Source of the DNA: Octopus bimaculoides
Taxonomy: Eukaryota
Direction of reading: 5' to 3'
Assembly: GCF_001194135.2 (NCBI RefSeq)
Contig: NC_068989.1
Location: forward strand, 18,752,196 to 18,815,899
DNA length: 63,704 bases
Shown one piece after another: positions 35,607-55,652 of the stretch (position 1 is its first letter; each line of letters begins with the position of its first letter). The notes under the pieces are model-generated. The model saw only the letters and a program-made list of their open reading frames with translations, made no database searches and had not been told where the DNA came from. The position numbers and the translations under genes were made by a program.

Positions 35607-35631
35607 ATGTTATTATACTTGCAACAATGCA
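35607..35631 (+). CDS. Candidate first coding exon of the Cys-module surface protein (MLLYLQQC+A)
   Basis: Acceptor tttgctgtag at 35570, ATG at 35607, strong phase-1 donor CA|gtgagt joining 36425 in frame. The resulting signal peptide is weak. Confidence 0.3.
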
Positions 35632-36024
35632 GTGAGTATTGATTTACCTATGGAAAGTAGTGGCAAACTACACTTATTTCTTTACTGCCCACAAGGGGCT
35701 ACACACAGAGGGGACAAACAAGGACAGACAAACGGATTAAGTCGATTATATCGACCCCAGTGTGTAACTGGTACTTATTTAATTGACCCTGAAAAGATGA
35801 AAGGTAAAGTCAACCTTGGCAGAATTTGAACTCAGAACGTAGCAGCAGATGAAATATGGCTAAGCATTTTGCCCGGTGTGCTAACATTTCTGCCAGCTCG
35901 CCGCCTGGCAAACTACACTTGTGTACCATAACTTATTAACAGGCTCACTTTATAATCCAAGTTAATGAAAACAACAAATCCATCATTAATGTTCAAGTGT
36001 GTATTTTCAAAATTTAAGCCTTAA

Positions 36025-36320
36025 TCCTGATTTTTCTGGTGTCAGCTCTGTTAGAAAGAGTGTTGCCTGGGCAGCTAGGGCAACACCCCTGCATCCGCCA
36101 CTGAGATCTACATTATAGTGTTATCTGAGGGAGATTTGGCTGCTATTTCTAACTGTTTGAGCAACCACATAGAGTCCTGATTTTTCTGGTGTCAGCTCGG
36201 TTAGAGTGTTGCCTGCGCAACTAGGGCAACACCCCTGCATCCACCACTGAGATCTACATTATAGTGTTATCTGAGGGAGATTTGGCTGCTATTTCTAACT
36301 GGTTGAGCAACCACATAGAG
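36025..36320. repeat. Local tandem duplication (150 bp + 146 bp)
   Basis: Two adjacent near-identical units starting tcctgatttttctggtgtcagctc, with no N-gap between them. Confidence 0.85.
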
Positions 36321-36424
36321 GCTTCTTCATTGGCTTGACTGTTGTTATAAAAAAGGTTCTGATGTTGAGATGTTATGGAAAAGGTTCTGATGTTATTATA
36401 CTGATGCTGATGTTTCCCTTGTAG

Positions 36425-36548
36425 CTTATTGCACTACTCTGGCACTGGGTAAATGTGATATTGAAAGGGCCAAAGATATCTTGAAAAAACTGAAAGAAAT
36501 GACAAAGGTGCCTCCAAAATTCGATGATTCTGATATGGAACTGTTGCT
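36425..36548 (+). CDS. Cys-module protein, module 1 exon A (xYCTTLALG-KCDIERAKDILKKLKEMTKVPPKFDDSDMELLL)
   Basis: Acceptor tttcccttgtag, donor CT|gtaagt, 124 nt, phase 1-2, open frame. ALG|KCD looks like a signal-cleavage boundary. Confidence 0.75.
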
Positions 36549-36966
36549 GTAAGTATCTTGACTCCTTTATGTCTTCCTAGAATATGTATATATGTATATG
36601 TTTTTAAATGAAATTCTTTTATTCTTTGTAAGCCTAGTACTCATTCTATTGGTCTCTTTTGCCACACCGCTAAGTTACGGGGACGAGAACACACCAAGAT
36701 CGGTTGTCAAGCAATGGTGGGGGACAAACACAGACACACAAATGCACACACACACACATATATATATATATACATATATATATNNNNNNNNNNNNNNNNN
36801 NNNNNNNNNNNNNNNNNNNNNNNNNNNNNNNNNNNNNNNNNNNNNNNNNNNNNNNNNNNNNNNNNNNNNNNNNNNNNNNNNNNGTAAGCAAGCTACTTAC
36901 CACACAGCCTTTAATTTTAATTTTCTTTTTTTTACTTTCTTATTAATACTGATGGTTGTGGTCAGC

Positions 36967-37014
<48 letters not shown>

Positions 37015-37648
37015 CACTCACCCACTCACTCACACACACACACACACACAACTGCATGGGGAATTCAAACTGAGAACAGGGAAAGCATTACCAGTCTTTC
37101 TGCCTTTGCTACAGCTACTTCAAACATACATGCTCAAGATATGAATTATTTAGTAGAAAAACAATCAGACTGGTAGAGTTGGGAGACAAAGGAAAGTACT
37201 TCAATATCTCAATCCCTTATCAAACATATGGAAGAAAAGATAATTTATCTCCCTACATCTCAAAAAACAAAAATCACATATGGAAGAGAAATTGTTGACA
37301 GTACAAGCCAATGTGTCTAATAAAATATTCTTGGATATATGAGCACCACTCAAAAATGGTACATTTGAGCATTTGTAGAAGGTCACAAATTGTTCAAAGC
37401 TAAAATATTTTCTGATTCTGAGATGACCTAGCTTTAGGAATGCAATTTTCTAAACTCTTTTATGTATTTCATGGATTCTAACAATGCTTTATGTATATAT
37501 ATATCTGTCTGTGTATGTATCAAACTGCACTCTTGGTTCAAATATTCTTTAAGTTCCTTAAGAAGCATTTCCACTTCTTAAATCATAATTATTACCTGAA
37601 CATTAATAAAAAATATTATCAAAGTTTTGTACTCTACTACCACAAACA

Positions 37649-39213
37649 TCTATATATATATAAAAATGAGAATGTGTGTCTGTCTGTCTGTCTGTGTGAA
37701 TCCCTAAAACTCGAGAACTACGCAACCAATTTCATTCAAATTTTACAGATGCCTTACTTAGGGTTCCAGTTGTGTTTTAGTCAAAAAAAAATTTTAACTT
37801 CTTCCAGAGTTCGAGCCCACAGCAACATAATATCTCCTCCACTATTTAAGTATTACGTGTCAAAAGTGAAACGAAAACACTCATGTCAAATACTTTCACT
37901 TTAAAAATGAAACTATTCTACTAACTGAAACAATCACATTTCGATACTGTAATGACAGATNNNNNNNNNNNNNNNNNNNNNNNNNNNNNNNNNNNNNNNN
38001 NNNNNNNNNNNNNNNNNNNNNNNNNNNNNNNNNNNNNNNNNNNNNNNNNNNNNNNNNNNNNNNNNNNNNNNNNNNNNNNNNNNNNNNNNNNNNNNNNNNN
38101 NNNNNNNNNNNNNNNNNNNNNNNNNNNNNNNNNNNNNNNNNNNNNNNNNNNNNNNNNNNNNNNNNNNNNNNNNNNNNNNNNNNNNNNNNNNNNNNNNNNN
38201 NNNNNNNNNNNNNNNNNNNNNNNNNNNNNNNNNNNNNNNNNNNNNNNNNNNNNNNNNNNNNNNNNNNNNNNNNNNNNNNNNNNNNNNNNNNNNNNNNNNN
38301 NNNNNNNNNNNNNNNNNNNNNNNNNNNNNNNNNNNNNNNNNNNNNNNNNNNNNNNNNNNNNNNNNNNNNNNNNNNNNNNNNNNNNNNNNNNNNNNNNNNN
38401 NNNNNNNNNNNNNNNNNNNNNNNNNNNNNNNNNNNNNNNNNNNNNNNNNNNNNNNNNNNNNNNNNNNNNNNNNNNNNNNNNNNNNNNNNNNNNNNNNNNN
38501 NNNNNNNNNNNNNNNNNNNNNNNNNNNNNNNNNNNNNNNNNNNNNNNNNNNNNNNNNNNNNNNNNNNNNNNNNNNNNNNNNNNNNNNNNNNNNNNNNNNN
38601 NNNNNNNNNNNNNNNNNNNNNNNNNNNNNNNNNNNNNNNNNNNNNNNNNNNNNNNNNNNNNNNNNNNNNNNNNNNNNNNNNNNNNNNNNNNNNNNNNNNN
38701 NNNNNNNNNNNNNNNNNNNNNNNNNNNNNNNNNNNNNNNNNNNNNNNNNNNNNNNNNNNNNNNNNNNNNNNNNNNNNNNNNNNNNNNNNNNNNNNNNNNN
38801 NNNNNNNNNNNNNNNNNNNNNNNNNNNNNNNNNNNNNNNNNNNNNNNNNNNNNNNNNNNNNNNNNNNNNNNNNNNNNNNNNNNNNNNNNNNNNNNNNNNN
38901 NNNNNNNNNNNNCTCCACTGATTCACTTGCAAAGTGTTGAGTAAAATTATTTCGTTGCAGACCTCCTTTGGGTCTTTTTATTATCACTACGACACACATA
39001 GTCCCCAGTTGGTAACATTGATTTCAAGGCCCTCCTAGATGAGAGACTGGCATTCCACTTAATGTCTATGTTCCATGCTGGCATGGATTGGAGAGTTATT
39101 AATGTAGAAATATGGTATCGTAGCAACTAACAGTTGAGGGTTGCGTAGTCTAGACGGCGTTTTTAGATTTCATTATTCTCTTTAACCCGGGCAAAGCTGG
39201 GTATTTCTGCTAG
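37649..39213 (+). mobile_element. Helitron-like element (or two ends) spanning a gap
   Basis: A|TCTATATATATAAAAATGAG 5' end; 3' hairpin ACCCGG-GCAAAG-CTGGGT then CTAG|T. Confidence 0.65.
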
Positions 39214-40463
39214 TTAACTATAATTTAATATAACACCTTTAAAGTTAGTAAGCATAATAAAACCCATCATTGCATGCAGCTGCTCTGATATCAACAATCA
39301 TCCTTTAGAATCTATATGGTTATGGATATTGCATACTAATGTTTAGTTATTACCACTAACAACAACTCTAAAGCTTATGTTAGTATCACTTGATATTCCT
39401 TTTAAATTGAGGTTTTATTGACATTCATTCTTTAAAAACCTGGATGGAAGCAAACAAGCTTCTTTAACTTCATTCATTTGGTTGTTAAAGGAAAATTCAG
39501 TACTATCATCATCGTCATTTAATGTCCGCTTTCCATGCTAGCATGGGTTGGACGATTTGACTGAGGACTGGTGAAACCAGATGGCTACACCGGGCTCCAA
39601 TCTGATTTGGCAGAGTTTCTACAGCTAGATGTCCTTCCTAACGCCAACCACTCAGAGAGTGTAGTGGGTGCTTTTACATGCCACCGGCATGAAGGCCAGT
39701 CAGGAGGTACTGGCAACGGCCACACTCGAAATGGTGTATTTATGTACCACCTGCACAAGAGCCAGTCCAGGGGCACTGGCAACAATCTCGCTCAAAAGTT
39801 CTTTCATATGCTGCGGGCACAAGTGCCAGAAAGGCAACGCTGGGCACAGGTGCCATCACAATTTCGCTTTCGCTTGCCCCAATAAGTCTTCGCACGCTGA
39901 GTTTCATGTCCAATGAAGGAGACGACGTTGGCATGGGTGCTAGTCATCGAATTTAACTTGATTTCGATTTCACTTGCCTCAACAGGTCTTCGCAAGTGGA
40001 GTTTAGTGTCCAATGAAGGAAGGTACGCATAAGTGGACTGGCTGAGGCCAGAGCAAGTTAAACACCTCTAACAAAAATTTTTACAGACAATGAATAAATC
40101 AATAAATTCATTGTGTATAAATATACTTAATTAAATCAGATTAAGATAGAATCATTTTGATAAAAGCTCAAGTTATATTAGAGCTGATAAGATCCCAGTA
40201 AGAATGGAAATTAGATTTTAATCCTCCCATCACTCTTTTCCTGTCTTCCTTTCTACCTTTTTAACTTAAACTTTTTAGTCTCAGCATTTTTTTATATCAA
40301 GACCAGAGTTGGTGATCTTGCACTTTATCTGTTCATTCATCTTATCTCTGTATACTATTAAATATCTCTTTGAGAAACCTTCATGTTGTTCCTTTTTAAG
40401 TGTTTACTATGCATTCCAAAGGTAATTGAAAATTCTTTCATGTCATACCAATCTTTCTTTCAG

Positions 40464-40563
40464 AATGCCAAAATTTCTCAACTAAATTGAAAGAAATTAA
40501 AGTCTGTCGTGCAAAATTAGTCCCTACCAAATTATTTACCAGTGGCATAGAAGAATTTTGTAG
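40464..40563 (+). CDS. Cys-module protein, module 2 exon A (ECQNFSTKLKEIKVCRAKLVPTKLFTSGIEEFCS)
   Basis: Acceptor ctttctttcag, donor AG|gtaagt, 100 nt, phase 1-2, C-x12-C-x17-C. Confidence 0.8.
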
Positions 40564-40714
40564 GTAAGTAATAGGATTTTTCAGTCTCATCTGACCAACT
40601 CAGTTTGTTGCTAACCAACAACCAAACAATTGGTTTTCTCTAAGTGCATTTAAGTGCTGCTCTAGTATATTTCTTCATTTATATATAATTCACATTCAAA
40701 TTGATAATATTAAT

Positions 40715-41178
40715 TTCCTACAATTGTTTGCATTGCTCTCTGACAAAAGTCAAGACACATATAATAGACTTTTTGCCAAAATAAATGAATTACTGCAGAA
40801 TGAGGGACCTGATAGTATAATTATGGATTTTGAAAAAGCACCCATAATGGATTTCTGGAATTTGGCATGCTGCCTGTTTCATTTAGGACAAAATGTGTAC
40901 AAGCATGTTGTGCAAGAAGGACTAAAATGCAGATATCACGAAGATGACAGTTTTAGTCTCAAAATGCGGTGCCTTTTTGTCATTGCTTTACTGCCGGTTG
41001 ATGATGTTGTAGATGGATATGAACTAATTGTAGATGATGATGATATTCCAAAGTCAATTGTATCCTATTTTGAAAATAATTATATAGGACTACCTAGAGC
41101 AGCGAACCACCAGGGGTCTGCAGACCCCCAGTTGATTCGCAAAGGTAGCACTGGGTGTCCGTGAGCTAAATTTAAAAC

Positions 41179-41254
<76 letters not shown>

Positions 41255-41790
41255 AGGACAAGCATATTAAAAGGGGTCCGTGAGAAAACTTATTTAAATA
41301 AAAAGTTTGGGAGGCCGCTGTTGGGAACCACTGACCTAGAGAAAGAGGACAGAGGAGGCGACACCTTGAACTTCCATTTCCATTATCTATATGGAATGTT
41401 TGGGATTGATGTATGACGTTGATTGCTCATACTACAAATAGTTTAGAAACCTACCACAGCGCGCTGAAAATGACAGTGAATATTAGTCATCCAAATATTT
41501 GGAAACTTATTGATGTGATTAAATGTGAGGAAAGGTTTGCCAGTACCAAATTACAGAAGTTTATGCAAGGAGTAGAACCAAGCCAAAAAAAAGTACATGG
41601 AAAAATGTGATCCAAGCCAAAAAATTTTTCTAAAAGCAATTACACACAATCTTAAATTTTAAGATAAAATGAATATGTAATACAGCAAACCTTAAAATAA
41701 ATTTTTTTTTTTTATTCAGATATTCATTCTTCCATTTTTCTATGTTGACGAATTGACTGGGGACAAATTAAACTATGACAAATTTCCGTC
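40715..41790 (+). pseudogene. MULE (Mutator-like) transposase remnant
   Basis: FALLSDKSQDTYNRLF, IIMDFEKA, CLFHLGQ, YFENNYIG, FPLSIWNV, TNSLETYH, HPNIWKLI. Confidence 0.85.
41100..41333. mobile_element. hAT MITE nested in the MULE transposase
   Basis: Perfect 8-bp TSD ACCTAGAG (41092-41099, 41334-41341); right TIR GGGAACCACTG; internal (TA)n. Confidence 0.85.
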
Positions 41791-42021
41791 AACGAATTGA
41801 CTGGACACCATCTCTTTCTCTTTCTCCCTCACCGTCAATGAATTGACTGGACACCATCTCTTTCTCTTTCTCCCTCACCGTCAATGAATTGACTGGACAC
41901 CATCTCTTTCTCTCTTTCTCCCTCACCGTCAACGAATTGACTGGACACCATCTCTTTCTCTTTTTCTCCCTCACCGTCAACGAATTGACTGGACACCATC
42001 TCTTTCTCTCTTTCTCCCTCA
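41786..42021. repeat. Five-copy 46-48-bp tandem repeat
   Basis: Unit ccgtcaacgaattgactggacaccatctctttctc(tc)tttctccctca, starting at 41786, 41832, 41878, 41926, 41974. Confidence 0.9.
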
Positions 42022-42348
42022 TCTATATGACTGAAACACATTTTCTACTTCCGAGAGATAAGCTTTATTCTGCCCATGTCACCATTATTCCTAGTCAGCT
42101 TTCAACTTTCTGTTGTTTCTATAAATAACTGAATTTTTTCAATTTAAACTTTTTACTTTTTATGGTTTTGGTCAGAAGGAAGGGACTGTGCCCATCACCA
42201 TCTTAGGACCCTTCAATAGAAAGGTCAGGTTGATGTGGCTGATGTTTAACTTGAACTTCTTCAAATCAGCGTCTGTAGAAGGAAATTATTAAAGGTTGAC
42301 ATACTTGGGAGGAAAGATTGGGGAAAGTGATTAGTGTAGGGTCTAAAA

Positions 42349-42696
42349 CAGTGGTTCTCAACTGGGGTCCATATAGCCCCTGAGGGCCCATATAAGATTT
42401 TAGGGGGTCCACACAACAAAATAGTAAATTGGGGATCCACAATTGTATTTTATAGGCTCCTAAAAAAATGTTGCTAAGATGTATGTATTAGTATGTATTG
42501 CAAGAAACAGCTAGGTTTCTTTCTCTAACATTCTACATAGTTCAACCTACACAAGTAAGTGTGTAACAAACAAAATAGGAATTTTGAAAGAAGTTTCTAT
42601 ATAACTAGTTTTTAAACATTGAATGGCTATGGGAGTCCACCAGAATGAAATAGTAATCAGAGGGGTCCATGGATAAAAAACGGTTGAGAACCCTTG
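42349..42696. mobile_element. hAT MITE
   Basis: TIR CAGTGGTTCTCAAC / GTTGAGAACCCTTG; TSD GTCTAAAA/GCCTAAAA. Partial relative at about 50700-50845. Confidence 0.85.
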
Positions 42697-43242
42697 GCCT
42701 AAAAGAAAAGGAACTCAGTTTATCTGATTGGCGAGCTTGACATGAGGTGACCATAACTGAGTAAACTCTGAGGTGTTGAGACCATTGTAGAAGAGGAAAA
42801 ATGAAGAAACTGATCTTCTGTAGGTTAGAACTTGGAGTATTAATGACTGACTCCATGCCAATTAATCAAATAACCTTTCTTTGGATGTTGTTGACTGGAA
42901 CATTTATATGTATAGCAAGTAACAGCACCATCTCAGATATGGAAGCAGTATTCTACTATGGGTCTTATTTAAGTTTTGTTGAGAATCAAGCTATTGATTA
43001 GAACTGAAATATATTTTCTGGACTTCAAGAGGGAAGTGTGTGTGTGTGTAAAGTTTTAATATTTTTAAATCTCTTCAGTTTGATAACTTTACTGCTAGGT
43101 TGGTAGTAGAAGTTTACTTAGCTGTTTTGGTTCTGTTGTTAATTGAATAAAGAAATTTGGAAAGGCAGACATTGAAAACCCAAATAAACTTGATCAGTTC
43201 TCCATCTGAAACTGAATCTTTAACCACAACATAAACCCTTCA

Positions 43243-43332
43243 CAAGTCTCTTCATAGAACCAAGTCTCTTCACATAACCAAGTCTCTTCACACAACCAAG
43301 TCTCTTCACATAACCAAGTCTCTTCACATAAC
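43243..43332. repeat. 18-bp tandem repeat, about 5 copies
   Basis: Unit accaagtctcttcacata, flanked by the direct repeat aaccacaacataa(a/g)ccctt. Confidence 0.85.
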
Positions 43333-43824
43333 CACAACATAAGCCCTTGAGTAAGTGACTTACTCACATTTGTACTACAGTAGTATATAGGATGCCACCT
43401 ACAGCACTCACCTCTACTAGTGGAAGTTTTTGGGACTTGTTCTCTCCCTTTCCACAACACTATCAAGATGACCACCAGGAAACTAAAGGATACTTTTGTA
43501 CACCTTACAACATGCTAACAATCCCATATAAGCACTTCTGGTCCATTACTGGATCTTCCTACCCACCTCTCCTCAATCAAGACAGCTTATTTAGCAGCAA
43601 TCCCTGCTGATTAAAAAAAAAACTACATTTGCCTTATGATTCATTTCTAACTGTACATTTCATGCATGTCACAAACTTTCTCCCAACTGTTCCTTCTACA
43701 CACCTCCAGTCTCAAAACCATTGGCACACAATCACAAAAGAAACTTTTAATTGCTCCTACCCAACAATGTAACCAGTTCCTTCTAAATTTTATGTTTGTA
43801 ATAAATGTTGTTATTTAATTCCAG

Positions 43825-43928
43825 CGAGTATGATCATTGTACACACATTTACAATTCATGTCCCGAATTGGAAAATCTTCCTCTAGGAAACTTTTTGAGT
43901 GTTGCAGCAACTGAAATATGTAAACTAG
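43825..43928 (+). CDS. Cys-module protein, module 2 exon B (EYDHCTHIYNSCPELENLPLGNFLSVAATEICKL)
   Basis: Acceptor ttaattccag, donor AG|gttagt, 104 nt, phase 2-1. Joins both neighbours in frame and supplies 3 Cys. Confidence 0.8.
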
Positions 43929-44523
43929 GTTAGTTTATATTTCTTGTGTTACTTATTTTATATATTAATTAATCAGAAAGCAAAATTGTGATGGCACCTG
44001 TGCCCAGCGTCACCTTCCTGGCACTTGTGCCGGTGGCACGTATAAAAACATTCAAGTGAGATCGTTGCCAGTGCCGCTGGACTGGCTCCTGTGCAGGTGG
44101 CACGTAAAATACACCATTCTGAGCATGGCCGTTGCCAGTACTGCCTGACTGGCCTTCGTGCCGGTTGCACGTAAAAGCACCCACTACACTCTCGGAGTGG
44201 TTGGCGTTAGGAAGGGCATCCAGCTGTAGAAACTCTGCCAAATCAAATTGGAGCCTGGTGTAGCCATCTGGTTCACCAGTCCTCAGTCAAATCGTCCAAC
44301 CCATGCTAGCATGGAAAGCGGACGTTAAACGATGATGATGATGAATCAGAGGAGGGGATGGCTGTGACCATGACTATTATAGGTCATCACAGATTTGTGA
44401 CATTGACATGGCTTGATGCTTACAACAAGGAGCTCTGCTCAATACATAAAGAGTTATAAATAAGTGAAAAAGATAAATTAGATTGTGTCACTACTATCTT
44501 TGTTGTTTTTTCTTTCTTTTCAG

Positions 44524-44620
44524 AATGTAAAACGAAAAGTGAACTACTGAATCAGATGAGCAACTGTTGGGGCTTTTTGAAAGCTAATAATGATATTACT
44601 AGAAAGACAGCTAAAAGTTG
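44524..44620 (+). CDS. Cys-module protein, module 3 exon A (ECKTKSELLNQMSNCWGFLKANNDITRKTAKSW)
   Basis: Acceptor ttctttttcag, donor TG|gtaagt, 97 nt, phase 1-2. EC-x12-C as in module 2. Confidence 0.8.
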
Positions 44621-45328
44621 GTAAGTCATCCATTGTCAAGTGTAGGAATGTATTACCATAATTTCATATAATTTACAAAGGAAAATAAACTATTTTGCTT
44701 CACTATTTGCCAGTGTAGATTGTCCTTAGTTTTCATGGACTCTAAATTCCTTGTTTTCACTTTCATATTTTGTGGCTTTGTTAAAGTAAGGATTTTACTT
44801 GAAACTTTTCTCTATCTACAGGTAAGTGTTTTGACCCTGGGCACATTCTCATACTCACATTAATACCCACAGTACTAGTGACAAGCCATAGGAAATCCTG
44901 GGTGGCTGTTTGATTTGTTATAAAATTCATTCATTTGTACTCACTACATGAAGATAAAGTATTAATTGATGTCCTAATGAGATTCATCATCATCATTGTT
45001 TTAAAGTCCACTTTCCCATGTTTGCGTAGCTCAGATGGAGTTTATTGAGATGGAATTTCTACAGCTGGGTGCCCTTCCTGTCACTAACCCACGTCTGTTT
45101 CTGAGCAATATTTCTCCATGGCCAGATATGTTTTCACAGAATATTGGAAATAAAATTACCCTGCTAGTATGAATGACAATCATTTACAACTATTATGCAA
45201 TGTCAGGACATGTCTTGACATCACATAACAGTTATACATGACTGTTACTGTCATACAAGAAATGTAATTTTATTTCCAATATTCTGTGAGAACACACCTG
45301 ACCATGGAGAAATAATATATATATATAG

Positions 45329-45662: not shown

Positions 45663-45685
<23 letters not shown>

Positions 45686-46536
45686 GGCTTCTTTCAGTTT
45701 CCATTTACCACTCACAAGGCTTTGGTCAGCCTAAGGATGTAGTAGAAGACATTTACCCAAGTTGCCACACTGTGGGACTGAACCCAGAGCTAAGTGGTTT
45801 TGATAAGTAACCTTCTTAATAAACCATCTGCACCTAACCATGTCTTTATGATATTTTACATGAATAATTGCTATGATGGTGCCTTGACATAAGGCAAAGA
45901 ATATAATCCCCTGCTACTTGCTTCAGTTTACCTGGTTGACATCTACAACTACTACTTTTCATCTGTAATAGTAAAAGTAATAGTTAGGTAAAGATTTAGT
46001 TTCAGATGAAGAACTGATCACGTTTATTTGGGTTTTCAATGTCTGTCTTTCCAGTAGAGAAGGCTATAAAACACTAGTGACTACAACAGCATGCACAGGA
46101 AGAGTACTTTGCTGTATATTGAGACTTGTATATCTTGGTTTGAACAGGCTTTGAAATCCTGACTTTATAAGCTGTAATTGAACATCTTCAGAATGATTTA
46201 TACTTCTTGTTATCAACACCACCACCATCATCATTATAATTGTAAATGTGTTACTGTCATATAATCAGTATCCTTCATTTCCAATCTTCTGTGAAAACAT
46301 GTCTGGTCATGGGGACATATTGCCTTACCTTGAAACAATAGAAGGGGCATCCAGCTGTAGAAAATTTGCCTTGACAAATTCTGTCTGATTTATGCAGAAT
46401 GAGTATTTTACAAATATTCATATACTATTTTATTATATTATACAGATATATGTAAAAATACATACCTGTTTATCTCATTGATTTTTGCTATTGAAAATTT
46501 CCGTTTTATTCCTACATTTTTATCACTCTCTCCCAG

Positions 46537-46661
46537 GAAATATAATGAATTTTACCAATGTATTTCATCTAAATCAAGACCAGGCTGTTCTATAACACAA
46601 AACCAGGCATTAAGGATTTTTCCTCTTTTTAGCCATGAGAATGCTCTTGAAAACAATAGTG
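46537..46661 (+). CDS. Cys-module protein, module 3 exon B (KYNEFYQCISSKSRPGCSITQNQALRIFPLFSHENALENNS)
   Basis: Acceptor ctctctcccag, donor TG|gtaagc, 125 nt, phase 2-1. Lies inside ORF 46478..46711. Confidence 0.8.
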
Positions 46662-47539
46662 GTAAGCACTGTTTTTTTTTTATAGTTAACTCACAATCTT
46701 ATATAAACTAAAAGAGCAAGTACAAACAGTCAAGTGCATAAGATGCTGAAGAATTAACACTAAGATCAGAAGTTTCTATCCTGACACTAAATCATGTCAT
46801 TGTCTCAGTCTACTTAACTGTAATTAGGTACCACATAGCAAGTGACTGTAACATAATGAACTTCACAAATGTTTCCATTAGCTTTTGTAGTACTAAGTTC
46901 AACTCTTGTAGGTACAGGATGTAGTTTGGAGAGGAATGGGGGCTCCACCAAGCTAACTCTCTAACTTTCTAATTCAGTACGGCTCTGGCACTCATTGTTG
47001 ATTTTCAATCTGTTTTTAACCAATCAACCAATTATAGAAATAAAAACAAAGCTGACCGACAGATCTAGGCTTTTAATTTAATACTTTATATCTTCCACAA
47101 AGATATCATGGTGTGCTGGAGTTTGTTTCCAACATATTAAGCGTTTAAAAGAACTTTAAAAAAATCTGGAATAGGGAGGCTATATGGGCATGTGGGTATT
47201 TTGAACAGGTATACGGGTATTTGAAAATACTTCATGGAGTGATGACCATACCCTGCATAGTTACAAGCTGCCCTTTGACAAGACATAGCACCCATTCAGT
47301 CACCCTACCAGGGATACAGCATGGTGGATTGTGAAAAGGTAGCAGAAGAGCTTAACTGAACCAATGGTACTGAATGGAGGAATCCTAGATGACCAGTGGT
47401 CAGGATCACCAAGCTTTATCAAGAAAGTAACTGCAGCGCTTCCATAGGGGACCAACCACCTTCATGGTTGTATAATCAGCTAATGAAAGATTCACTCAAG
47501 CTCCTGATTCAAATTCATAATAATGGAATTAGATGGTGA

Positions 47540-48052
47540 CAGAGAGTCGTGAGAATCTCTTTCCAAAATTCCTCAAAACCTCTATAAAGCACTCTTTGTT
47601 GACCATCCGACCAGAAGGTAGCCAGTGGGTGTAGGTATGTGCATGTTGTCAAAAATGGGTAAATGGGTATCACCATAAGCTTCCTGGTGGATTTGCTTTG
47701 CCTGGTCTCTTGTGCTAGTGGAAATCAGATGCTTGGCTCACAAAAGTTATTTCATAAGTTTCTGTGGAATTTTTGATGAGTTCAACACAAAACTTTATTA
47801 TTGCACAGAAACCTTCCAAATTGTCTTCCTGACTGCTTTCTGCAAATTAGTCAGCTATGAAAAACAGTGTTTAATAAGGTGTGTAGAAAGTGATGTTAAA
47901 GCCTTCTCATTCAATCTGGAATAACAGAAGTTGGCAGGTCAGCTTATTAGATGTATAGTAATGATATACTAAAATTACAATAATCAAGGACAGTTGTAAC
48001 TGCTGCTTCTGAAAGAAAGTCTCAAAACTTCTGGAATGCACCTCGTAAGTCA
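47540..48052 (-). mobile_element. Degraded mariner transposase fragment with one TIR
   Basis: Minus strand TACGAGGTGCATTCCAGAAGTTT terminus, IKFCVELIKNSTETYE, HWLPSGRMVNKECFIEVLRNF. Confidence 0.7.
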
Positions 48053-48126
48053 GTATACATAGATTAGTTTGTTTGGGGGTTTTTTTCCAGCAGTTTATAT
48101 AAACGTGTATAAATGTACAGATCCAT

Positions 48127-48339
48127 TTAACCCTTTAGCATTTAGATTACTCTGTCAAATGTAATGCTTTGTTTTGACTTAATCATGCATTATCTCCATA
48201 GCTTTGGGATTTTAATAATGTGATTGTTTATTTTAAGAATGACATTGTAAGATAGGTGTGAGGGGCTGGATGTGGCTAATTTGAACATGAAACAAGTAGG
48301 ATATTTGGACTGGATGTGACTGATTTAAATGCTAAAGGA
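48127..48339. mobile_element. piggyBac-like MITE (TTAA-CCCTTTAGCAT...ATGCTAAAGG)
   Basis: TTAA plus CCC terminus with an inverted right end. Partial copy at about 27226-27405. Confidence 0.65.
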
Positions 48340-50571
48340 TTGGTAGAATGTTGTGTCGTGAGGGATATTTTCTCAATCACACACTTCTTCAAATCATTGC
48401 TATTCTATTTGAAAAATGGAGGAACACATTGAATGCACTGTTTGCGAAAAGATGCAACGGTCACAGTTAGAATAGAATGCAGCTCGAACAGTAGATGTTT
48501 CACTGAGATTGCAAAGGCCAAACTATGCAGAACCTTGATAACCACTGAGGTTTGAAGAGAGATTAGTATTAATATAAAGAGATTGATATCAACGTGAAGA
48601 GAGAATCATTAGTAAGCCGGGCAAAATGCTTAGTGGCATCTCATCCGTCTTAATATCAATTCCACCAAGGTCAACTTTGCCTTTTGTCCTTTCAGGGTCA
48701 ATAAAATAAGTACCAGTTGAGCACTGGGGGGTGGGGGTCAATCAAATCAACCTATCCCTCTCCTGGAAAGCAATATGAAGACAGAACTTCTGTACTATCA
48801 TATATTTCTTAAAATACATAAATGTATATAAATGAGCAGATTCAGAGCATCATGCTGCTAATCTATGAAGCTCCTCTTATGGACTCGGCTATCAGTTGAC
48901 ATAGTAATTGATTACAAAGAAGTGTAATGTAGGGTGTCCATGTAACTGAAAATCCAGAAGATCCAATCAATGAAATTATTTCATGAGTAATATATAAAAA
49001 CCGCCTCTCATACCTCCTGACTTTACGGTCTCATAAATGTATATATTTACATTGTAGACTCACATGTATTTATATACTCTTTTACTTGTTTCAGTCATTT
49101 GACTGCGGCCATGCTGGAGCACTGCCTTTTTAGTCGAGCAAAATGACCCCAGGACTTATTCTTTGGAAGCCTAGTACTTATTCTATTGGTCTATTTTGTT
49201 GAACTGCTAAGTTACGGGGACGTGAACACACCAGCATCGGTTGTCAAGCGATGCTGGGGGGACAAACACAGACACATATATATAGGTGCAGGAGTGGCTG
49301 TGTGGTAAGTAGCTTGCTTACCAACCACATAGTTCTGGGTTCAGTCCCACTGCGTGGCACCTTGGGCAAGTGTCTTCTACTNNNNNNNNNNNNNNNNNNN
49401 NNNNNNNNNNNNNNNNNNNNNNNNNNNNNNNNNNNNNNNNNNNNNNNNNNNNNNNNNNNNNNNNNNNNNNNNNNNNNNNNNNNNNNNNNNNNNNNNNNNN
49501 NNNNNNNNNNNNNNNNNNNNNNNNNNNNNNNNNNNNNNNNNNNNNNNNNNNNNNNNNNNNNNNNNNNNNNNNNNNNNNNNNNNNNNNNNNNNNNNNNNNN
49601 NNNNNNNNNNNNNNNNNNNNNNNNNNNNNNNNNNNNNNNNNNNNNNNNNNNNNNNNNNNNNNNNNNNNNNNNNNNNNNNNNNNNNNNNNNNNNNNNNNNN
49701 NNNNNNNNNNNNNNNNNNNNNNNNNNNNNNNNNNNNNNNNNNNNNNNNNNNNNNNNNNNNNNNNNNNNNNNNNNNNNNNNNNNNNNNNNNNNNNNNNNNN
49801 NNNNNNNNNNNNNNNNNNNNNNNNNNNNNNNNNNNNNNNNNNNNNNNNNNNNNNNNNNNNNNNNNNNNNNNNNNNNNNNNNNNNNNNNNNNNNNNNNNNN
49901 NNNNNNNNNNNNNNNNNNNNNNNNNNNNNNNNNNNNNNNNNNNNNNNNNNNNNNNNNNNNNNNNNNNNNNNNNNNNNNNNNNNNNNNNNNNNNNNNNNNN
50001 NNNNNNNNNNNNNNNNNNNNNNNNNNNNNNNNNNNNNNNNNNNNNNNNNNNNNNNNNNNNNNNNNNNNNNNNNNNNNNNNNNNNNNNNNNNNNNNNNNNN
50101 NNNNNNNNNNNNNNNNNNNNNNNNNNNNNNNNNNNNNNNNNNNNNNNAAATTTTCACATTGAGATTATGAACCTCGTACATAAAAAGTCATAAATTAAGG
50201 CATTTGCCTCTTAGGATTTTTCATTACACAATATGAGGCACTCGTCCTCTTAGGTTTTTTCGCCCGATATAGCCTTCGCTTCTCTCAAGCAAAACGATGG
50301 GTCTGGGTCGGGCCACTTTTCAATACTGAATTCGCCGAGGGGGAAGGAATTCACCAACGCACTTATGTGCCTACTCGACATGACCTCCGCAGACACCTGC
50401 GGAGGCCAGTCCGGATCCTTAGTACAGGTGTGGACTCCCTCTCTCTGACGCTTCCTTTTATTCACAAATTTCTGCAAGCTATTTACCACACAGCCACTCC
50501 TGTGTCTATTGTACTTACATATGTTTATAATTGCTTTTCATCATATATGTATTACATATTATTCTAACCAG

Positions 50572-50653
50572 GTAATATACCATCTGCTAACGACTGTGTT
50601 ACTAAGTGGAATATATTACAAGATTTGAAAGAATGGACAAATGAAATATGCAA
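50572..50653 (+). CDS. Cys-module protein, module 4 exon A (xNIPSANDCVTKWNILQDLKEWTNEICK)
   Basis: Acceptor attctaaccag, donor AA|gtaagt, 82 nt, phase 1-2. Ends on Cys plus a split codon, like module 2. Confidence 0.75.
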
Positions 50654-51016
50654 GTAAGTTTGAAAATCTAAATATTCACATTTTTTTACTCTCTTTCTTA
50701 CCAGTGATTCTCAACAAGAGTTCATATAAGATTTTGTGGGGTCCATGCCAGCAAAATAGTAAATTGGGGATCTACTTACAGTAGTATTTAAAAGGCCCAT
50801 GAAAAAAAAATGTTATTTAGATGTATTTGTTGCAAGAAACTGCTAGCGCAGGAGTGGTTGTGTGGTAAGTATAGGTGCAGGAGTTGCTTACCAACCACAT
50901 GGTTCCGGGTTCAGTCCTACTGCGTGGCACCTTGAGCAAGTGTCTTCTACTATAGCCTCAGTCCGACCAAAGCCTTGTGAGTGGATTTGGTAGATGGAAA
51001 CTGAAAGAAGCCCGTC

Positions 51017-51076
<60 letters not shown>

Positions 51077-51364
51077 CTGTGTTTGTCCCCCAACATCGCT
51101 TGACAACTGATGCTGGTGTGTTTACGTCCCTGTAACTTAACGGTTCAGCAAAAGAGACTGATAGAATAAGTACTAGGCTTACAAAGAATAAGTCCTAGGG
51201 TCGATTTGCTCGACTAAAGGCGGTGCTCCAGCATGGCCGCAGTCAAATNNNNNNNNNNTCAGTCCTACTGCGTGGCACCTTGAGCAAGTGTCTTCTACTA
51301 TAGCCTCAGTCCGACCAAAGCCTTGTGAGTGGATTTGGTAGATGGAAACTGAAAGAAGCCCGTC

Positions 51365-51424
<60 letters not shown>

Positions 51425-51669
51425 CTGTGTTTGTCCCCCAACATCGCTTGACAACTGATGCTGGTGTGTTTACGTCCCTGTAACTTAACGGTTCAGCAAA
51501 AGAGACTGATAGAATAAGTACTAGGCTTACAAAGAATAAGTCCTAGGGTCGATTTGCTCGACTAAAGGCGGTGCTCCAGCATGGCCGCAGTCAAATGACT
51601 GAAACAAGTAAAAGAATATGTGTAAATAAATTAGGTTGCTTCTAGTTTATTCCCATTTAATTGAACATT

Positions 51670-52148
51670 AATCATCATCATCATTATTTAGCATCTGTTT
51701 TCTATGCTGGCACGAGCTGGACAGTTTGACCGGAGCTGTTAAGGCCAGAGGCTGCACCAGGTTACATTGTTCTGTTCTGGCATGTTTTCTGTGGCTGGCT
51801 GCCCTTCCTAACACCAGCTACTCCACAGAGTGTACTGAGTGCTTTAATGTGACCCCAGTACGAGTGCATTTTATGAGGCACCAATGCCAGTATCAGTTCT
51901 GCTGTGGCTGATGGGTCTTCTTCAGTACAGCAACGTGCCACATATCTTGATCATCTCCTTCATAAAGCTTAGTGCCTTGAGATCAGCCTTCAATACTTCG
52001 TCCCATGTCTTCCTGGGTCTCTCTCTTCCATAAGTTTCATCCACTGACCGGCACTTCTGTATGCAACTGTCTACTTCCATATGCATCACATGACCAAGCC
52101 AGTGCAGTCTTCTCTCTTGCACACTGCATCTAATTCTTATGCCCAACA
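51670..52148 (-). mobile_element. RTE 3' fragment with ORF2 C-terminus
   Basis: IRCSVQERRLHWLGHVMHM...RPRKTWDEVLKADLKALS. Confidence 0.8.
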
Positions 52149-53704
52149 CATATCTTAATTAACTCAAACTCTATCTCAGGATATTGAGTACATCATTACA
52201 TGAACACACATTTATATAAGAATGTGAATGTAAGAATGTATATTTTGCAAAATTTAATTTAATGTATGTATGGCTGTGTGGTTAAGAATTCTGCTTTGCA
52301 AACAAGAAGTTTTGGATTCAATTCCACAGTGTGGAACTTTAGACTTCTATTACCCCAGGTTGAAAAACGCGAGTAAAACGAACAAAAAGTGTTTAAATCA
52401 GCATACACTTTAGCGTTTCGATTCACTGCCAGAAGAAACGAATTATCTCCCTTAGACTGGAAAAAAAAGAGACGTCACTTTCCATTATTATTATTCAAAC
52501 TTAAAAAAAACGTAAATAATTTCAAAACTTCTCTCCTAGCAAAAAGAGACTGAATGCTAGCGTATATAACTGAACTGGTGACACATTTAATCATTGACAT
52601 TAACATGATAACAATTACTCTCTCTCTCTCGAAACAATAATTCAATTAACGTTATTATGACGATCAGTTGGTGATGGTTGAAAAGTATTAATAAAGTACT
52701 CGAAGTCTGCTTTGCCTTTCTTTTACCCAGAGTCAATAAAATATAGGACCAGTCAGGTACAGGGATCGATTTAATCAACTAAGTCCTTCCCCTAAATTTC
52801 TGGCCTTGTTCCTATATTGGAAACAACTAAAGGCAGTGGAGCATCAGATAAACATGTCTTGCAGTAGTTTTTCTGGGGTGTTTTTTATTCTGAGTTCAAA
52901 TCCTATGGATGTCAACTTTGCCTCTCATATTTTGGAGGTTAATAAAATACAATATCGGTCACGTTCAGAGCTGTTGGTGTCAATTAAACGTCTCCTACCA
53001 AAATTGATAGTCTTGCGTCTAAATTTGAAACAATACACCGAGGTTGACTTAGCCTTTCATCCTTTTGGAGTCATTAAAGCAAGAGTCAGTTCATTACTAG
53101 AATGGATAACATCAATTTACACACTCTGAAATAGCAAACCTTGTGTCAAAATTTGAAGTAATTATCATTTCATGACTATATCAGAGCTTTCCAGTTTTTA
53201 CATAGTTCAATGTATTCTTTGTGTTATTTCTAAAATCATTGAAAGAACAGAGTGAATCTGATAATAGGCAAACAAACAAATTTATTTATGGCTAGAACAG
53301 TTCCACAATCATAAAAAAATAAAGGATATTCTAAATTGTCTTCAATTCACTTTTTGCACCTCTGGTTATGCCAAATTGAACATGGAATCAATTACGAAAT
53401 TTCCATTCACACACTGTGGACACTAAGCTCATTGAAAGATTTTCTGTTCGCATTGGTGAAATATCTGCCAGTCTTTCCTTCCACAATGATATGCAAATAG
53501 AAACATCATTGGATGACTTAGTTATACCTACACAATGAAACTAATAAGAGGTAAAGTATCTTCTGCTGACCTTAGATATATGTATATTCAGTTTCTTAAG
53601 ATATATATTATCAAGATATATATAATCATGATTCTGGGTTCAGTCCCAGATCAACCAAAGCCTTGTGAGTGAATTTGGTAGACAGAAAGTGAAAGAAGCC
53701 CATC

Positions 53705-53781
<77 letters not shown>

Positions 53782-53782
53782 C

Positions 53783-53815
<33 letters not shown>

Positions 53816-53832
53816 GTTTTAGGGAAAAAAAC

Positions 53833-53991
53833 AAGTTTCATGAACTCATCGATGAAAATCCACTATCACATGATATTTATCACTATCTTATGATATTTAC
53901 TTTGTTTTATATTATACTCATTTATTGTGCTTTTAATTGTTAATTTTTCTATATGTGATAGTGGATTTTCATCGATGAGTTCATGAAACTT
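53833..53991. repeat. Perfect 39-bp inverted repeat with 81-nt spacer next to a gap
   Basis: Arms 53833-53871 and 53953-53991. Confidence 0.75.
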
Positions 53992-54370
53992 AGNNNNNNN
54001 NNNNNNNNNNNNNNNNNNNNNNNNNNNNNNNNNNNNNNNNNNNNNNNNNNNNNNNNNNNNNNNNNNNNNNNNNNNNNNNNNNNNNNNNNNNNNNNNNNNN
54101 NNNNNNNNNNNNNNNNNNNNNNNNNNNNNNNNNNNNNNNNNNNNNNNNNNNNNNNNNNNNNNNNNNNNNNNNNNNNNNNNNNNNNNNNNNNNNNNNNNNN
54201 NNNNNNNNNNNNNNNNNNNNNNNNNNNNNNNNNNNNNNNNNNNNNNNNNNNNNNNNNNNNNNNNNNNNNNNNNNNNNNNNNNNNNNNNNNNNNNNNNNNN
54301 NNNNNNTGACATTAAAATGCTGATAATGTCGATGTCTTTTCTGTTAACTGAAGTTATACTTTTATTCCAG

Positions 54371-54513
54371 ACAAGTCCAGGAGTCCAAAGATTGCATTCT
54401 AAAAAATTTAAAGGATAAGAAGAAAATAATGAACACAATAAATTGTAAATGTTATCCTGTAAATGACAACTTCCCTAAGTTTGATGTTTTGGACCCTGAT
54501 CACAAAATAAAAG
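54371..54513 (+). CDS. Cys-module protein, module 4 exon B (QVQESKDCILKNLKDKKKIMNTINCKCYPVNDNFPKFDVLDPDHKIK)
   Basis: Acceptor cttttattccag, donor AG|gtcagt, 143 nt, phase 2-1, open frame. Confidence 0.8.
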
Positions 54514-54598
54514 GTCAGTGGTTTGATATTATCAAATATATCATTTTTCTTACATTTCGTTTTGTTAGTGTTTGTCACTCACTCTCTCCCTCCCTTCC

Positions 54599-54650
<52 letters not shown>

Positions 54651-55144
54651 TGGTTGTAAGTCATTATGGCATTGTATTATCTCTGGATTCATATACATAA
54701 ACAACACAGATAATACAGAAATAATTATAGTATGTAATACATAGATATTATGGAGATAACACAAATGATATGGAATTTGTATATGTAATATGTAAGTAGT
54801 ACATAGATATTATGCAAATTGTACATAAATAATAATTAAATAATGCATTAGCTGTGTAAATATTACGGAAGTAACACATATTGTTTGTAAATAATATATA
54901 ACTGTTATGAAAATACTGCATAAATAATTTGAAAATACAATGGCTTGCATATTCATTCTTTATATGTTCTGCCAAATTCAGAAATGAATATGCAAATCAG
55001 TGTTGTGTTTTGTCATTGGAGAATAACTTCTCCTTTCAAACAAATTTGCGTTCATAACACACTCATTTCATTAACATAATGGAACTTTGGGACACCTGAT
55101 ATTTCGACATTATTTTGTCTCATCAGTCAAGAGAACCCCAGACT

Positions 55145-55175
<31 letters not shown>

Positions 55176-55578
55176 GTTTAACGTCCGCTTTCCATGCTAG
55201 CATGGGTTGGACGATTTGACTGAGGACTGGTGAAACCGGATGGCAACACCAGGCTCCAATCTAATTTGGCAGAGTTTCTACAGCTGGATGCCCTTCCTAA
55301 CGCCAACCACTGAGAGTGTAGTGGGTGCTTTTACGTGTCACCCGCACGAAAACGGCCACGCTCGAAATGGTGTCTTTTATGTGCCACCCGCACAAGCCAG
55401 TCCAGGGGCACTGGCAACGATCTCGCTCGAAAATCCTACGGGAGCCAGTCAGGCGGTACTAAATAATGATATATTTGCTGATGTCTGCCTACCAATAATA
55501 AATCATCACAGAAATATGTAATTTATGAATCATATGTCATTTCTATTTGCACAGTTAATGGTTGATTTTATATTGCAG

Positions 55579-55652
55579 GCTTTACACCCAAATTTGAAAT
55601 CAATATATTACAGACCCTTTTTTTTTCTCTCCTTGCTGTAAAATATTTATAA
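55579..55652 (+). CDS. Cys-module protein, terminal exon with GPI-signal-like tail (GFTPKFEINILQTLFFSLLAVKYL*)
   Basis: Acceptor ttatattgcag, phase 1. Small residue, spacer, hydrophobic run, then TAA with no cytosolic tail. Confidence 0.75.

What the first reader, a model, noticed from the sequence alone, without database searches (positions are those of the whole stretch)
35607..55652. Hidden four-module, Cys-patterned, probably GPI-anchored surface protein gene
Seen: eight short exons spread over 19 kb, each with canonical AG/GT sites, splice into an open frame with alternating phases (A exons 1-2, B exons 2-1), apart from one phase break after the first exon. Each A+B pair is one ~65-75 aa module with up to six Cys (module 2: C-x12-C-x17-C-x5-C-x6-C-x19-C), and the protein ends in a hydrophobic tail with no cytosolic part. 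The ORF track misses it almost entirely. Inference: a lineage-specific, exon-shuffled receptor, adhesion or ligand-binding protein resembling the small helical disulfide domains often annotated DUF19/T20D4.11-like in invertebrates. I cannot assign it to a named gene. This is the best candidate for an undescribed system in the window.
Basis: partly seen in the sequence, partly recalled or inferred. Interest (0 to 1): 0.75.

Follow-up and report, generated by a model that had tools for sequence, protein, structure and literature searches.

The report
Real octopus cysteine-rich surface protein gene

Summary
The finding is largely right. The spliced product matched predicted proteins at E 1e-118 (Octopus sinensis LOC115216338, 342 aa), at 100% identity (O. 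bimaculoides LOC106870553) and at E 5e-76 (Argonauta hians).

Its first (35607) and last (55579-55652) exons are false. The true first exon is at 24561-24594 and has a conserved GC donor. The true last exon is at 57579-57679.

The protein has a signal peptide, 16 conserved Cys, an all-helical prediction and a C-terminal GPI-type signal. Pfam, PDB sequences and Foldseek give no relative; DUF19 reaches only 13-14 bits against a cut-off of 23.2, and GFRalpha/GAS1 gives nothing.

The four modules are not detectably similar in sequence. The introns do alternate strictly between phases 1 and 2.

Within Octopus dN/dS is about 1.7. The gene is therefore real, annotated and uncharacterised, and belongs to an orphan family. 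Its function is inferred only.

The parts
24561..24594 (+). Coding exon 1: ATG plus the N-terminal part of the signal peptide (MFILTRFILLI). It ends in phase 1 with a non-canonical GC donor (TATAG|gcaagt).
   Evidence: tblastn of P0010 residues 1-11 gives 100% identity. Sequence read. The same GC donor is present in O. sinensis and Argonauta hians.
36425..36548 (+). Coding exon 2 (phase 1 to 2): end of the signal peptide, the predicted cleavage site ALG|KC, and the start of module 1.
   Evidence: tblastn hits of P0010 and P0012. Splice sites. Colinear with O. sinensis 17555-17678.
36784..36883 (.). Assembly gap that hides coding exon 3 (110 nt in O. sinensis and Argonauta, phase 2 to 1; encodes about DNPFYRDLLECPLSEAKPLYKSYEEAMKNALQHYEN).
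   Evidence: Exon 3 is not found anywhere in the readable window. The O. sinensis interval holding exon 3 maps between window 36614 and 36921.
40464..40563 (+). Coding exon 4 (phase 1 to 2): first half of module 2, CQNFSTKLKEIKVCRAKLVPTKLFTSGIEEFC.
   Evidence: Identical to the start of the older O. bimaculoides model P0027.
43825..43928 (+). Coding exon 5 (phase 2 to 1): second half of module 2.
44524..44620 (+). Coding exon 6 (phase 1 to 2): first half of module 3. It holds the internal Met at which the current RefSeq model P0011 starts.
46537..46661 (+). Coding exon 7 (phase 2 to 1): second half of module 3. It carries the family's most conserved motif, IFPLFSHEN.
50572..50653 (+). Coding exon 8 (phase 1 to 2): first half of module 4.
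54371..54513 (+). Coding exon 9 (phase 2 to 1): second half of module 4.
57579..57679 (+). Coding exon 10, the true last exon: VISSSSPAVFDGKMVSRLYSVTLLLVTRFTIQL plus the TGA stop. It encodes the GPI-type C-terminal signal and lies outside the finding's coordinates.
   Evidence: tblastn hits of P0010, P0011 and P0012. Acceptor and sequence. Hydropathy.

Best explanation
The region holds most of a genuine ten-exon protein-coding gene of Octopus bimaculoides (RefSeq LOC106870553, the orthologue of O. sinensis LOC115216338). The gene spans window 24561-57679 on the + strand.

It encodes a protein of about 340 residues. The parts are an N-terminal signal peptide, an ectodomain of about 290 residues predicted to be all-helical and held by 16 conserved cysteines (up to 8 disulfides), and a C-terminal serine run, spacer and short hydrophobic end typical of a GPI-attachment signal.

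Shown: the gene, its exons, its conservation and exon structure across octopods, the absence of detectable relatives, and a raised non-synonymous rate.

Inferred: the protein is exported, clipped after ALG, disulfide-bonded, and transferred to a GPI anchor at one of the serines, so that it sits on the outer face of the cell membrane. There it most likely acts as a binding or recognition molecule. Because its surface evolves faster than neutral sequence within Octopus, its partner is probably also fast-evolving (a gamete, a pathogen or a chemical cue).

The nine introns alternate strictly between phases 1 and 2. This suggests the ectodomain grew by repeated duplication of a two-exon, phase 1-1 unit whose copies have since diverged beyond recognition.
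For: - Homologues. The spliced chain hits P0010 (E 1.1e-118, 91% coverage), P0011 (100% identity) and P0012 (E 5e-76).
- Exon mapping.
- Conserved structure. O. sinensis and Argonauta have the same ten exons, the same phases 1,2,1,2,1,2,1,2,1 and the same GC donor in intron 1. The chance of that phase pattern is about 1e-5.
- Synteny. The window is colinear with the O. sinensis locus over 20.5 kb of aligned sequence.
- Transcription. A homologue at 24% identity (P0013, E 6e-24) sits as an uninterrupted 343-aa ORF on contigs of 1.1-1.7 kb from sequencing-run assemblies, most simply spliced mRNA.
- Conserved cysteines. Sixteen Cys columns are conserved in all full-length members.
- Topology. Every orthologue has exactly two hydrophobic segments, at the extreme N- and C-termini.
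- Secondary structure. Both AlphaFold models are all-helical; residues 21-110 reach pLDDT 70-87 in the second.
- Rate. dN/dS is 1.67 (bimaculoides-sinensis), 1.70 (bimaculoides-vulgaris) and 1.77 (sinensis-vulgaris). The tail exon alone gives 0.69. Non-synonymous divergence of 10.9% exceeds the intron mismatch rate of 6.7% (binomial p 1.4e-5), while synonymous divergence equals it.
Against: - Exon 3 is not visible in this assembly, so an intact O. bimaculoides gene is inferred, not shown. The current RefSeq model here is only 171 aa.
- No signal-peptide or GPI predictor could be run. The hydrophobic end contains an Arg in Octopus, and in P0013 it is followed by six polar residues.
- The dN/dS>1 test within the coding sequence is only borderline (Fisher p 0.052), and the three pairs are not independent.
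- The intron comparison uses only blastn-alignable segments and so understates neutral divergence.
- Against Argonauta dN/dS is 0.21, although dS is saturated at about 1.7-1.9.
- No expression data for Octopus could be examined.
- The structure models are weak (mean pLDDT 38 and 57), so 'new fold' cannot be claimed.
- The function is pure inference.
Confidence: 0.85

Rival explanations
1. The chain is a chance concatenation of short open frames in repeat-rich intronic or intergenic DNA and is not a gene.
For: Such chains are expected by chance. Hundreds to thousands of AG/GT-bounded, phase-matched pairs with 6 or more Cys occur on both strands and in random sequence. The region is full of SINE, MULE and LINE debris.
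Against: E 1e-118 and 5e-76 matches of the spliced product to proteins of three other octopods, with identical exon boundaries and phases.
Confidence: 0.01
2. Exon 40464-40563 is a remnant of the MULE transposase that follows it, not a host exon.
For: It lies 52 nt upstream of firm MULE homology (40616 onward) and in the same reading frame. There is a colinear weak match SGIEEFCR*VI against SGIDDAKRILI. The HMM envelope reaches back to 40535.
Against: The local alignment is not significant (shuffle p 0.15-0.2). The exon is 79% identical to O. sinensis and 63% identical to Argonauta residues 89-124, at the same place in the protein and with the same splice phases.
Confidence: 0.02
3. In O. bimaculoides the gene is a decaying pseudogene or a truncated gene, as the 171-aa RefSeq model suggests. 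On this reading the raised dN/dS reflects relaxed constraint rather than adaptation.
For: Exon 3 is unseen. RefSeq gives only 171 aa. A dN/dS of 1.67 is not significantly above 1 within the coding sequence (p 0.052).
Against: - All nine visible exons are open, with intact splice sites and all expected Cys.
- The missing exon falls exactly in an assembly gap.
- The same raised ratio appears between O. sinensis and O. vulgaris, which have complete genes.
- The non-synonymous rate exceeds the intron rate (p 1.4e-5), which relaxed constraint alone would not produce.
Confidence: 0.1
4. The protein is a very divergent member of the DUF19 (T20D4.11-like) or GFRalpha/GAS1 helical disulfide domain families. 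On this reading it has two domains of about 140-150 residues with 8 Cys each.
For: Both kinds of protein are helical, disulfide-rich and extracellular. GFRalpha and GAS1 are GPI-anchored (established knowledge).
Against: - The score is far below the DUF19 cut-off of 23.2.
- None of the octopod sequences gives the hit.
- Cys-rich profiles attract Cys-rich queries.
- The GDNF/GAS1 domain never appears, even at E 10.
- Profile searches of PDB sequences and Foldseek against PDB, which holds GFRalpha structures, find nothing.
- The two halves do not resemble each other.
Confidence: 0.12

Closest known systems
Predicted orthologues: O. sinensis LOC115216338 (XP_029641424.1, 342 aa), O. vulgaris CAI9727890.1, Argonauta hians LOC115216338-like (341 aa), O. 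bimaculoides LOC106870553 (XP_014772165.2)
   Same: Same gene. Identity is 100% to the O. bimaculoides model, 76-78% to O. sinensis and 45-48% to Argonauta. The ten-exon structure, intron phases, GC donor, Cys framework and termini are the same.
   Different: All are automatic predictions named 'uncharacterized' or 'hypothetical'. The O. bimaculoides model lacks exons 1-5. The O. vulgaris model has a different, probably wrong, C-terminus, although the canonical last exon is intact in its genome. No paper cites any of these identifiers.
GFRalpha / GAS1 (GPI-anchored receptors built of helical, disulfide-rich GDNF/GAS1 domains, Pfam PF02351)
   Same: Overall design: a signal peptide, several helical cysteine-rich units and a GPI-type end. 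The GFRalpha and GAS1 features are from established knowledge; those of this protein are.
   Different: No sequence or fold similarity was detectable. There are about 4 Cys per unit here, against the 10 I recall per GFRalpha domain.
DUF19 / T20D4.11-like domain (Pfam PF01579), nematode extracellular cysteine-rich domain
   Same: Extracellular and cysteine-rich, with a similar size to half of this ectodomain. One sub-threshold colinear hit from P0013.
   Different: 13-14 bits against a cut-off of 23.2. There is no hit from the octopod proteins. This protein has 8 Cys per half, against the 12 I recall for DUF19.
Fast-evolving GPI-anchored or secreted recognition proteins of gametes and immunity (for example Juno/folate-receptor family, Ly6/uPAR proteins such as Bouncer)
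   Same: GPI-type anchoring, many disulfides (the folate receptor also has 16 Cys, from memory), and dN/dS above 1 between close species.
   Different: No homology. Ly6 proteins are beta-rich, whereas this protein is predicted to be all-helical. No expression or binding data exist here.

Membership tests
Octopod LOC115216338 / LOC106870553 orthologue group | Full-length sequence similarity with a conserved Cys framework | tested here: met
   E 1e-118, 100% identity and E 5e-76. Sixteen conserved Cys columns.
Octopod LOC115216338 / LOC106870553 orthologue group | Same exon-intron structure and syntenic position | tested here: met
   Ten exons, phases 1,2,1,2,1,2,1,2,1, and a GC donor in intron 1 in O. 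sinensis and Argonauta. Introns are colinear with O. sinensis.
DUF19 (Pfam PF01579) | Score at or above Pfam's gathering cut-off (23.2 bits) | tested here: not met
   No hit for P0010, P0011, P0012, P0025, P0027 or their halves. P0013 module 4 gives 13.2-14.3 bits, E 0.036-0.078.
DUF19 (Pfam PF01579) | About 12 conserved cysteines in a domain of about 130-157 residues (recalled from the Pfam description) | tested here: not met
   There are 8 conserved Cys per half of about 140-150 residues.
GFRalpha / GAS1 (Pfam PF02351 GDNF domain) | Match to the GDNF/GAS1 domain profile | tested here: not met
   The family is never listed, even at E 10, for any member or half.
GFRalpha / GAS1 (Pfam PF02351 GDNF domain) | Fold similarity to solved GFRalpha domains | tested here: inconclusive
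   The best Foldseek hit against PDB has E 0.78 and is a generic helical repeat; there is no GFRalpha hit. The model has a mean pLDDT of only 57.
GPI-anchored proteins | N-terminal signal peptide | tested here: met
   There is a hydrophobic N-terminus in all four orthologues, with small residues at -3 and -1 (A-L-G|K; V-H-G|V). This is judged by rule only; no SignalP was available.
GPI-anchored proteins | C-terminal signal: small omega, omega+1 and omega+2 residues, a polar spacer, and a terminal hydrophobic stretch of 10-20 residues with no cytosolic part | tested here: inconclusive
   The end reads SSS(S), then PAVFDGKMVSR, then LYSVTLLLVTRFTIQL. Analogous ends occur in Argonauta and P0013. 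The features fit, but no predictor (NetGPI, big-PI) or experiment was available.
Ly6/uPAR three-finger proteins | Beta-rich three-finger fold of about 80 residues with 8-10 Cys | tested here: not met
   The prediction is all-helical and there is no Pfam hit.

The most novel reading that the evidence does not exclude
The gene founds an undescribed protein family, seemingly confined to cephalopods: a GPI-anchored, eight-disulfide, all-helical ectodomain with a fold not represented in PDB. It would have been built by serial duplication of a two-exon phase 1-1 unit. Within Octopus it would be under diversifying selection because it takes part in species-specific recognition (gamete, chemotactile or immune).
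Probability: 0.25. Interest if true: 0.6.

Novelty: new variant of a known kind. Interest (0 to 1): 0.42.

Why it matters
Cephalopod genomes hold many lineage-restricted genes whose roles are unknown. This one has a clear cell-surface design, a conserved cysteine framework and a non-synonymous rate above the neutral rate between close Octopus species. That makes it a reasonable candidate for a species-recognition or host-defence molecule and a concrete target for expression mapping and structure work.

For annotation there are two practical results:
- The O. bimaculoides RefSeq model (171 aa) is truncated. Nine of ten coding exons can be placed, including a first exon with a GC donor that GT-only rules miss.
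- The tenth exon is lost in a nominal 100-N gap.

The case also shows that a sequence-only reader can recover most of a real split gene. It shows equally that the splice-and-phase pattern carried no statistical weight until orthologues were found.

Tried and rejected
1. I first judged the chain a chance artefact, on the null counts and the absence of Pfam hits. I also read exon 40464-40563 as part of the neighbouring MULE transposase pseudogene. Both views were overturned.
2. My first homology search joined three 'good-looking' open frames (5792-6109, 16570-16716 and exon 2). It found only a genomic ORF from a related species for the first piece. Exon 2 alone found nothing through the search's shared 5-residue-word filter, although it is 78% identical to the O. 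sinensis protein.
3. I looked for exon 3 in the readable sequence, both in 36401-40600 and in the whole window. Nothing rose above noise.
4. I tested module-to-module and half-to-half homology with hhalign. All probabilities were below 1%.
5. AlphaFold with 3 sequences gave pLDDT 38. With 6 sequences it gave pLDDT 57. Foldseek against PDB returned only generic helical repeats at E >= 0.78.
6. PDB profile searches gave only weak hits: poxvirus A41/OPG170 at E 0.04-0.055 over 32 residues, treated as noise.
7. Literature searches for the gene and protein identifiers and for the sequencing run of P0013 returned no papers. A keyword search returned nothing relevant.
8. I could not name the organism behind P0013.

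Full report
**Origin and layout.** The window is 63,704 bases with 38% G+C and twelve N runs. It is eukaryotic DNA dense with repeats: self-BLAST shows SINE-like families and microsatellites throughout. A protein encoded here is 100% identical to Octopus bimaculoides XP_014772165.2, so the window comes from that species.

**Rebuilding the observation.** I enumerated every AG...GT interval on the + strand between 35000 and 56500 that is open in the stated phases. Exactly one exon pair reproduced C-x12-C-x17-C-x5-C-x6-C-x19-C: 40464-40563 plus 43825-43928. With splice-site filters and phase continuity the chain extended to 44524-44620, 46537-46661, 50572-50653, 54371-54513 and a terminal 55579-55652 ending in TAA at 55652. 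An upstream phase 1-2 exon at 36425-36548 cannot join 40464 in frame.

**Is it more than chance?**
- On the pattern alone, no. Phase-matched AG/GT pairs of 60-80 codons with 6 or more Cys number 1216 on this strand, 3567 on the opposite strand, 139-1760 in other parts of the window and 112-459 in first-order Markov sequence.
- Pfam found nothing in the modules.
- Exon 40464-40563 sits in frame just upstream of a MULE transposase pseudogene (40616-41134 and 41338-41592).
- At that point I judged the finding an artefact.
- The decisive test was a search with the spliced product. It returned O. sinensis LOC115216338 isoform X1 (342 aa, E 1.1e-118, 65% identity, 91% coverage), O. bimaculoides LOC106870553 (171 aa, 100% identity) and an Argonauta hians protein (341 aa, E 5e-76). 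The gene is real.

**True gene model.**
- tblastn of the orthologues onto the window, together with the sequence itself, gives ten coding exons. Nine of them are visible.
- E1 is 24561-24594 and carries the ATG. Its donor is TATAG|gcaagt, a GC-AG intron.
- E2 is 36425-36548.
- E3 is not visible.
- E4 to E9 are 40464-40563, 43825-43928, 44524-44620, 46537-46661, 50572-50653 and 54371-54513.
- E10 is 57579-57679 and ends in TGA.
- An older O. bimaculoides model (P0027, 249 aa) equals E4-E10 exactly.
Its GTGAGT donor lies in a 17-nt stretch that O. sinensis lacks.
It is replaced in all orthologues by E10.

**The gaps.**
- I fetched the O. sinensis locus (L002) and solved its exons exactly. I then aligned it to the window.
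- The two loci are colinear over 20.5 kb of aligned sequence.
- O. sinensis 17400-17744 aligns to window 36267-36614, and O. sinensis 20053 onward aligns from window 36921.
- The interval between, which holds O. sinensis exon 3 (19896-20005), therefore corresponds to a repeat plus gap 36784-36883. Exon 3 is not found anywhere else in the window.
- So the nominal 100-N gap hides about 2 kb, including a 110-nt phase 2-1 exon.
- The other four gaps in the finding lie in introns 3, 7 and 8, where O. sinensis has no coding exon.
- The 10-N gap at 51249-51258 is flanked by a 338-bp perfect duplicate, an unmerged overlap.

**Conservation of structure.**
- Argonauta hians (L004) has the same ten exons and the same GC donor in intron 1.
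- Its intron phases are 1,2,1,2,1,2,1,2,1, as in O. sinensis.
- The chance of that phase pattern is about 1e-5 under typical phase frequencies.
- Each exon pair is a phase 1-1 unit of 68-78 codons. That is the classic form of shuffled or duplicated extracellular modules (established knowledge).
- Sequence does not show that the units are related. hhalign probabilities between the four modules and between the two halves are all below 1%.
- Some traces remain: a C-x12-C at the start of E4 and E6, a C-x17-C ending exactly at the E4 and E8 donors, and CxTK at three module starts. I read these directly from the alignment and did not test them further.

**The protein.**
- The alignment of the octopod proteins with P0013 shows 16 conserved cysteines and the motifs NCWGF and IFPLF(S/D).
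- Hydropathy finds exactly two hydrophobic segments in every orthologue, at the very N-terminus and the very C-terminus.
- The N-terminus fits the -3/-1 rule for signal peptidase (ALG|KC).
- The C-terminus reads SSSS, an 11-residue spacer and a 16-residue hydrophobic end with nothing after it. That fits the rules for a GPI signal better than a membrane-spanning anchor (rule-based; no predictor was available).
- AlphaFold gave mean pLDDT 38 with three sequences and 57 with six. Both models are entirely helical, and residues 21-110 reach pLDDT 70-87 in the second.

**Relatives.**
- An exhaustive HMMER profile search of 1.84 billion representatives found only four proteins. Two are octopod members. 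One is P0013 (343 aa, E 6e-24). The last is a weak hit to a basic repeat protein from a metagenome (P0014, E 6e-4).
- P0013 has the same signal peptide, Cys framework and hydrophobic end.
- It occurs in eleven near-identical versions on contigs of 1.1-1.7 kb from sequencing-run assemblies. That is most simply spliced mRNA from another, unidentified, probably cephalopod species.
- Pfam gives no hit for any octopod member. For P0013 module 4 alone it gives DUF19 at 13.2-14.3 bits against a cut-off of 23.2.
It is still far below threshold, is unsupported by the other members, and involves two Cys-rich sequences.
- The GDNF/GAS1 domain never appears.
- PDB sequence profiles give only E 0.04-0.055 hits over 32 residues to poxvirus A41/OPG170.
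- Foldseek against PDB gives nothing better than E 0.78.
- No paper mentions the gene identifiers.

**Rate of evolution.**
- I extracted coding sequences from the window and from the O. sinensis, O. vulgaris and Argonauta loci. I then applied the Nei-Gojobori method.
- dN/dS is 1.67 for bimaculoides-sinensis (dN 0.118, dS 0.070, 301 codons), 1.70 for bimaculoides-vulgaris and 1.77 for sinensis-vulgaris (7 non-synonymous changes against 1 synonymous).
- Against Argonauta it is 0.21, with dS saturated.
- Six of the seven exons tested singly (E4-E10) give 1.5-2.9, except E6 (0.95) and the tail exon E10 (0.69).
- Within the coding sequence the excess is borderline (Fisher p 0.052).
- Synonymous divergence (6.7%) equals the mismatch rate of aligned introns (6.7% over 20.5 kb). 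Non-synonymous divergence (10.9%) exceeds it (binomial p 1.4e-5).
- Caveats: only alignable intron segments are counted, and the three pairs share branches.
- Because all cysteines and the core motifs are kept, the simplest reading is a conserved scaffold with a rapidly changing surface.

**Interpretation.**
- Shown: a real, conserved, ten-exon gene encoding a secretory-pathway protein with a fixed cysteine framework and no detectable relatives.
- Inferred with moderate confidence: GPI anchoring and a helical disulfide-stapled ectodomain.
- Inferred with low confidence: a recognition or binding role with a co-evolving partner, and an origin by serial duplication of a two-exon unit.
- The gene limits, the first and last exons, the claim that the gene is undescribed, and the specific family resemblance do not hold.

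**Verdict.** The feature is real and already present in RefSeq as an uncharacterised prediction. Its family is an orphan with a familiar overall design. Interest is moderate. It is useful for correcting the O. bimaculoides annotation and as a candidate fast-evolving cephalopod surface protein. It is not a new kind of system on present evidence.

Noticed in passing
window 40616-41134 and 41338-41592 (+): A MULE-family DNA-transposase pseudogene lies in intron 4, starting 52 nt after exon 4 and in the same frame. Its closest proteins are 71% identical: an O. bimaculoides MULE protein and, oddly, a prawn (Macrobrachium nipponense) protein. O. sinensis keeps only the two ends of the insertion.
   Followed up: partly
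window 24594/24595; L002 3034/3035; L004 1037/1038: Intron 1 of the gene uses a GC donor (AG|gcaagt). The donor is conserved in O. bimaculoides, O. sinensis and Argonauta hians, so GT-only exon rules cannot find the true first exon.
   Followed up: yes
window 50911-51248 and 51259-51596: A 338-bp, 100% identical direct duplicate flanks the 10-N gap at 51249-51258. It is almost certainly an unmerged contig overlap in the assembly, not biology.
   Followed up: yes
window 5792-6109 (+): A 106-codon open frame is 79% identical to a 101-aa ORF (P0001) on a 1.1-kb contig from another sequencing run. The similarity runs through the whole open frame. It could be a conserved exon of another gene or a shared repeat.
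   Followed up: no
window 33478-34488 (-), 4294-4643 (-), 6876-7151 (-): There are open frames with motifs typical of Tc1/mariner transposases, recognised by eye only. The first is two long ORFs of 134 and 149 aa in intron 1. There are also LINE reverse-transcriptase tail fragments near 28786-29133 (+) and 51925-52158 (-).
   Followed up: no
protein P0014 (JGI metagenome contig, 292 aa): A very basic repeat protein carries four copies of YKKKCPKYVKNWKKIRACRARKV. The repeat matches the family's exon 3/4 junction motif YENECPxFxxKxKxIxxCRxKLV with the same C-x12-C spacing (HMMER E 6e-4; hhalign probability 23%). It may be a compositional artefact or a distant relative.
   Followed up: partly
protein P0025 (O. 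vulgaris CAI9727890.1); locus L003 37070-37170: The O. vulgaris model ends in an unrelated 54-residue tail taken from an exon 9 kb further on. The canonical last exon is nevertheless intact in that genome, so this is a likely annotation error or an alternative isoform.
   Followed up: partly
window 35673-35897 and 32051-32248 (+), among others: A SINE-like repeat has an open frame reading LFLYCPQGATHRGDKQ... and recurs up to 18 times in the window.
   Followed up: no
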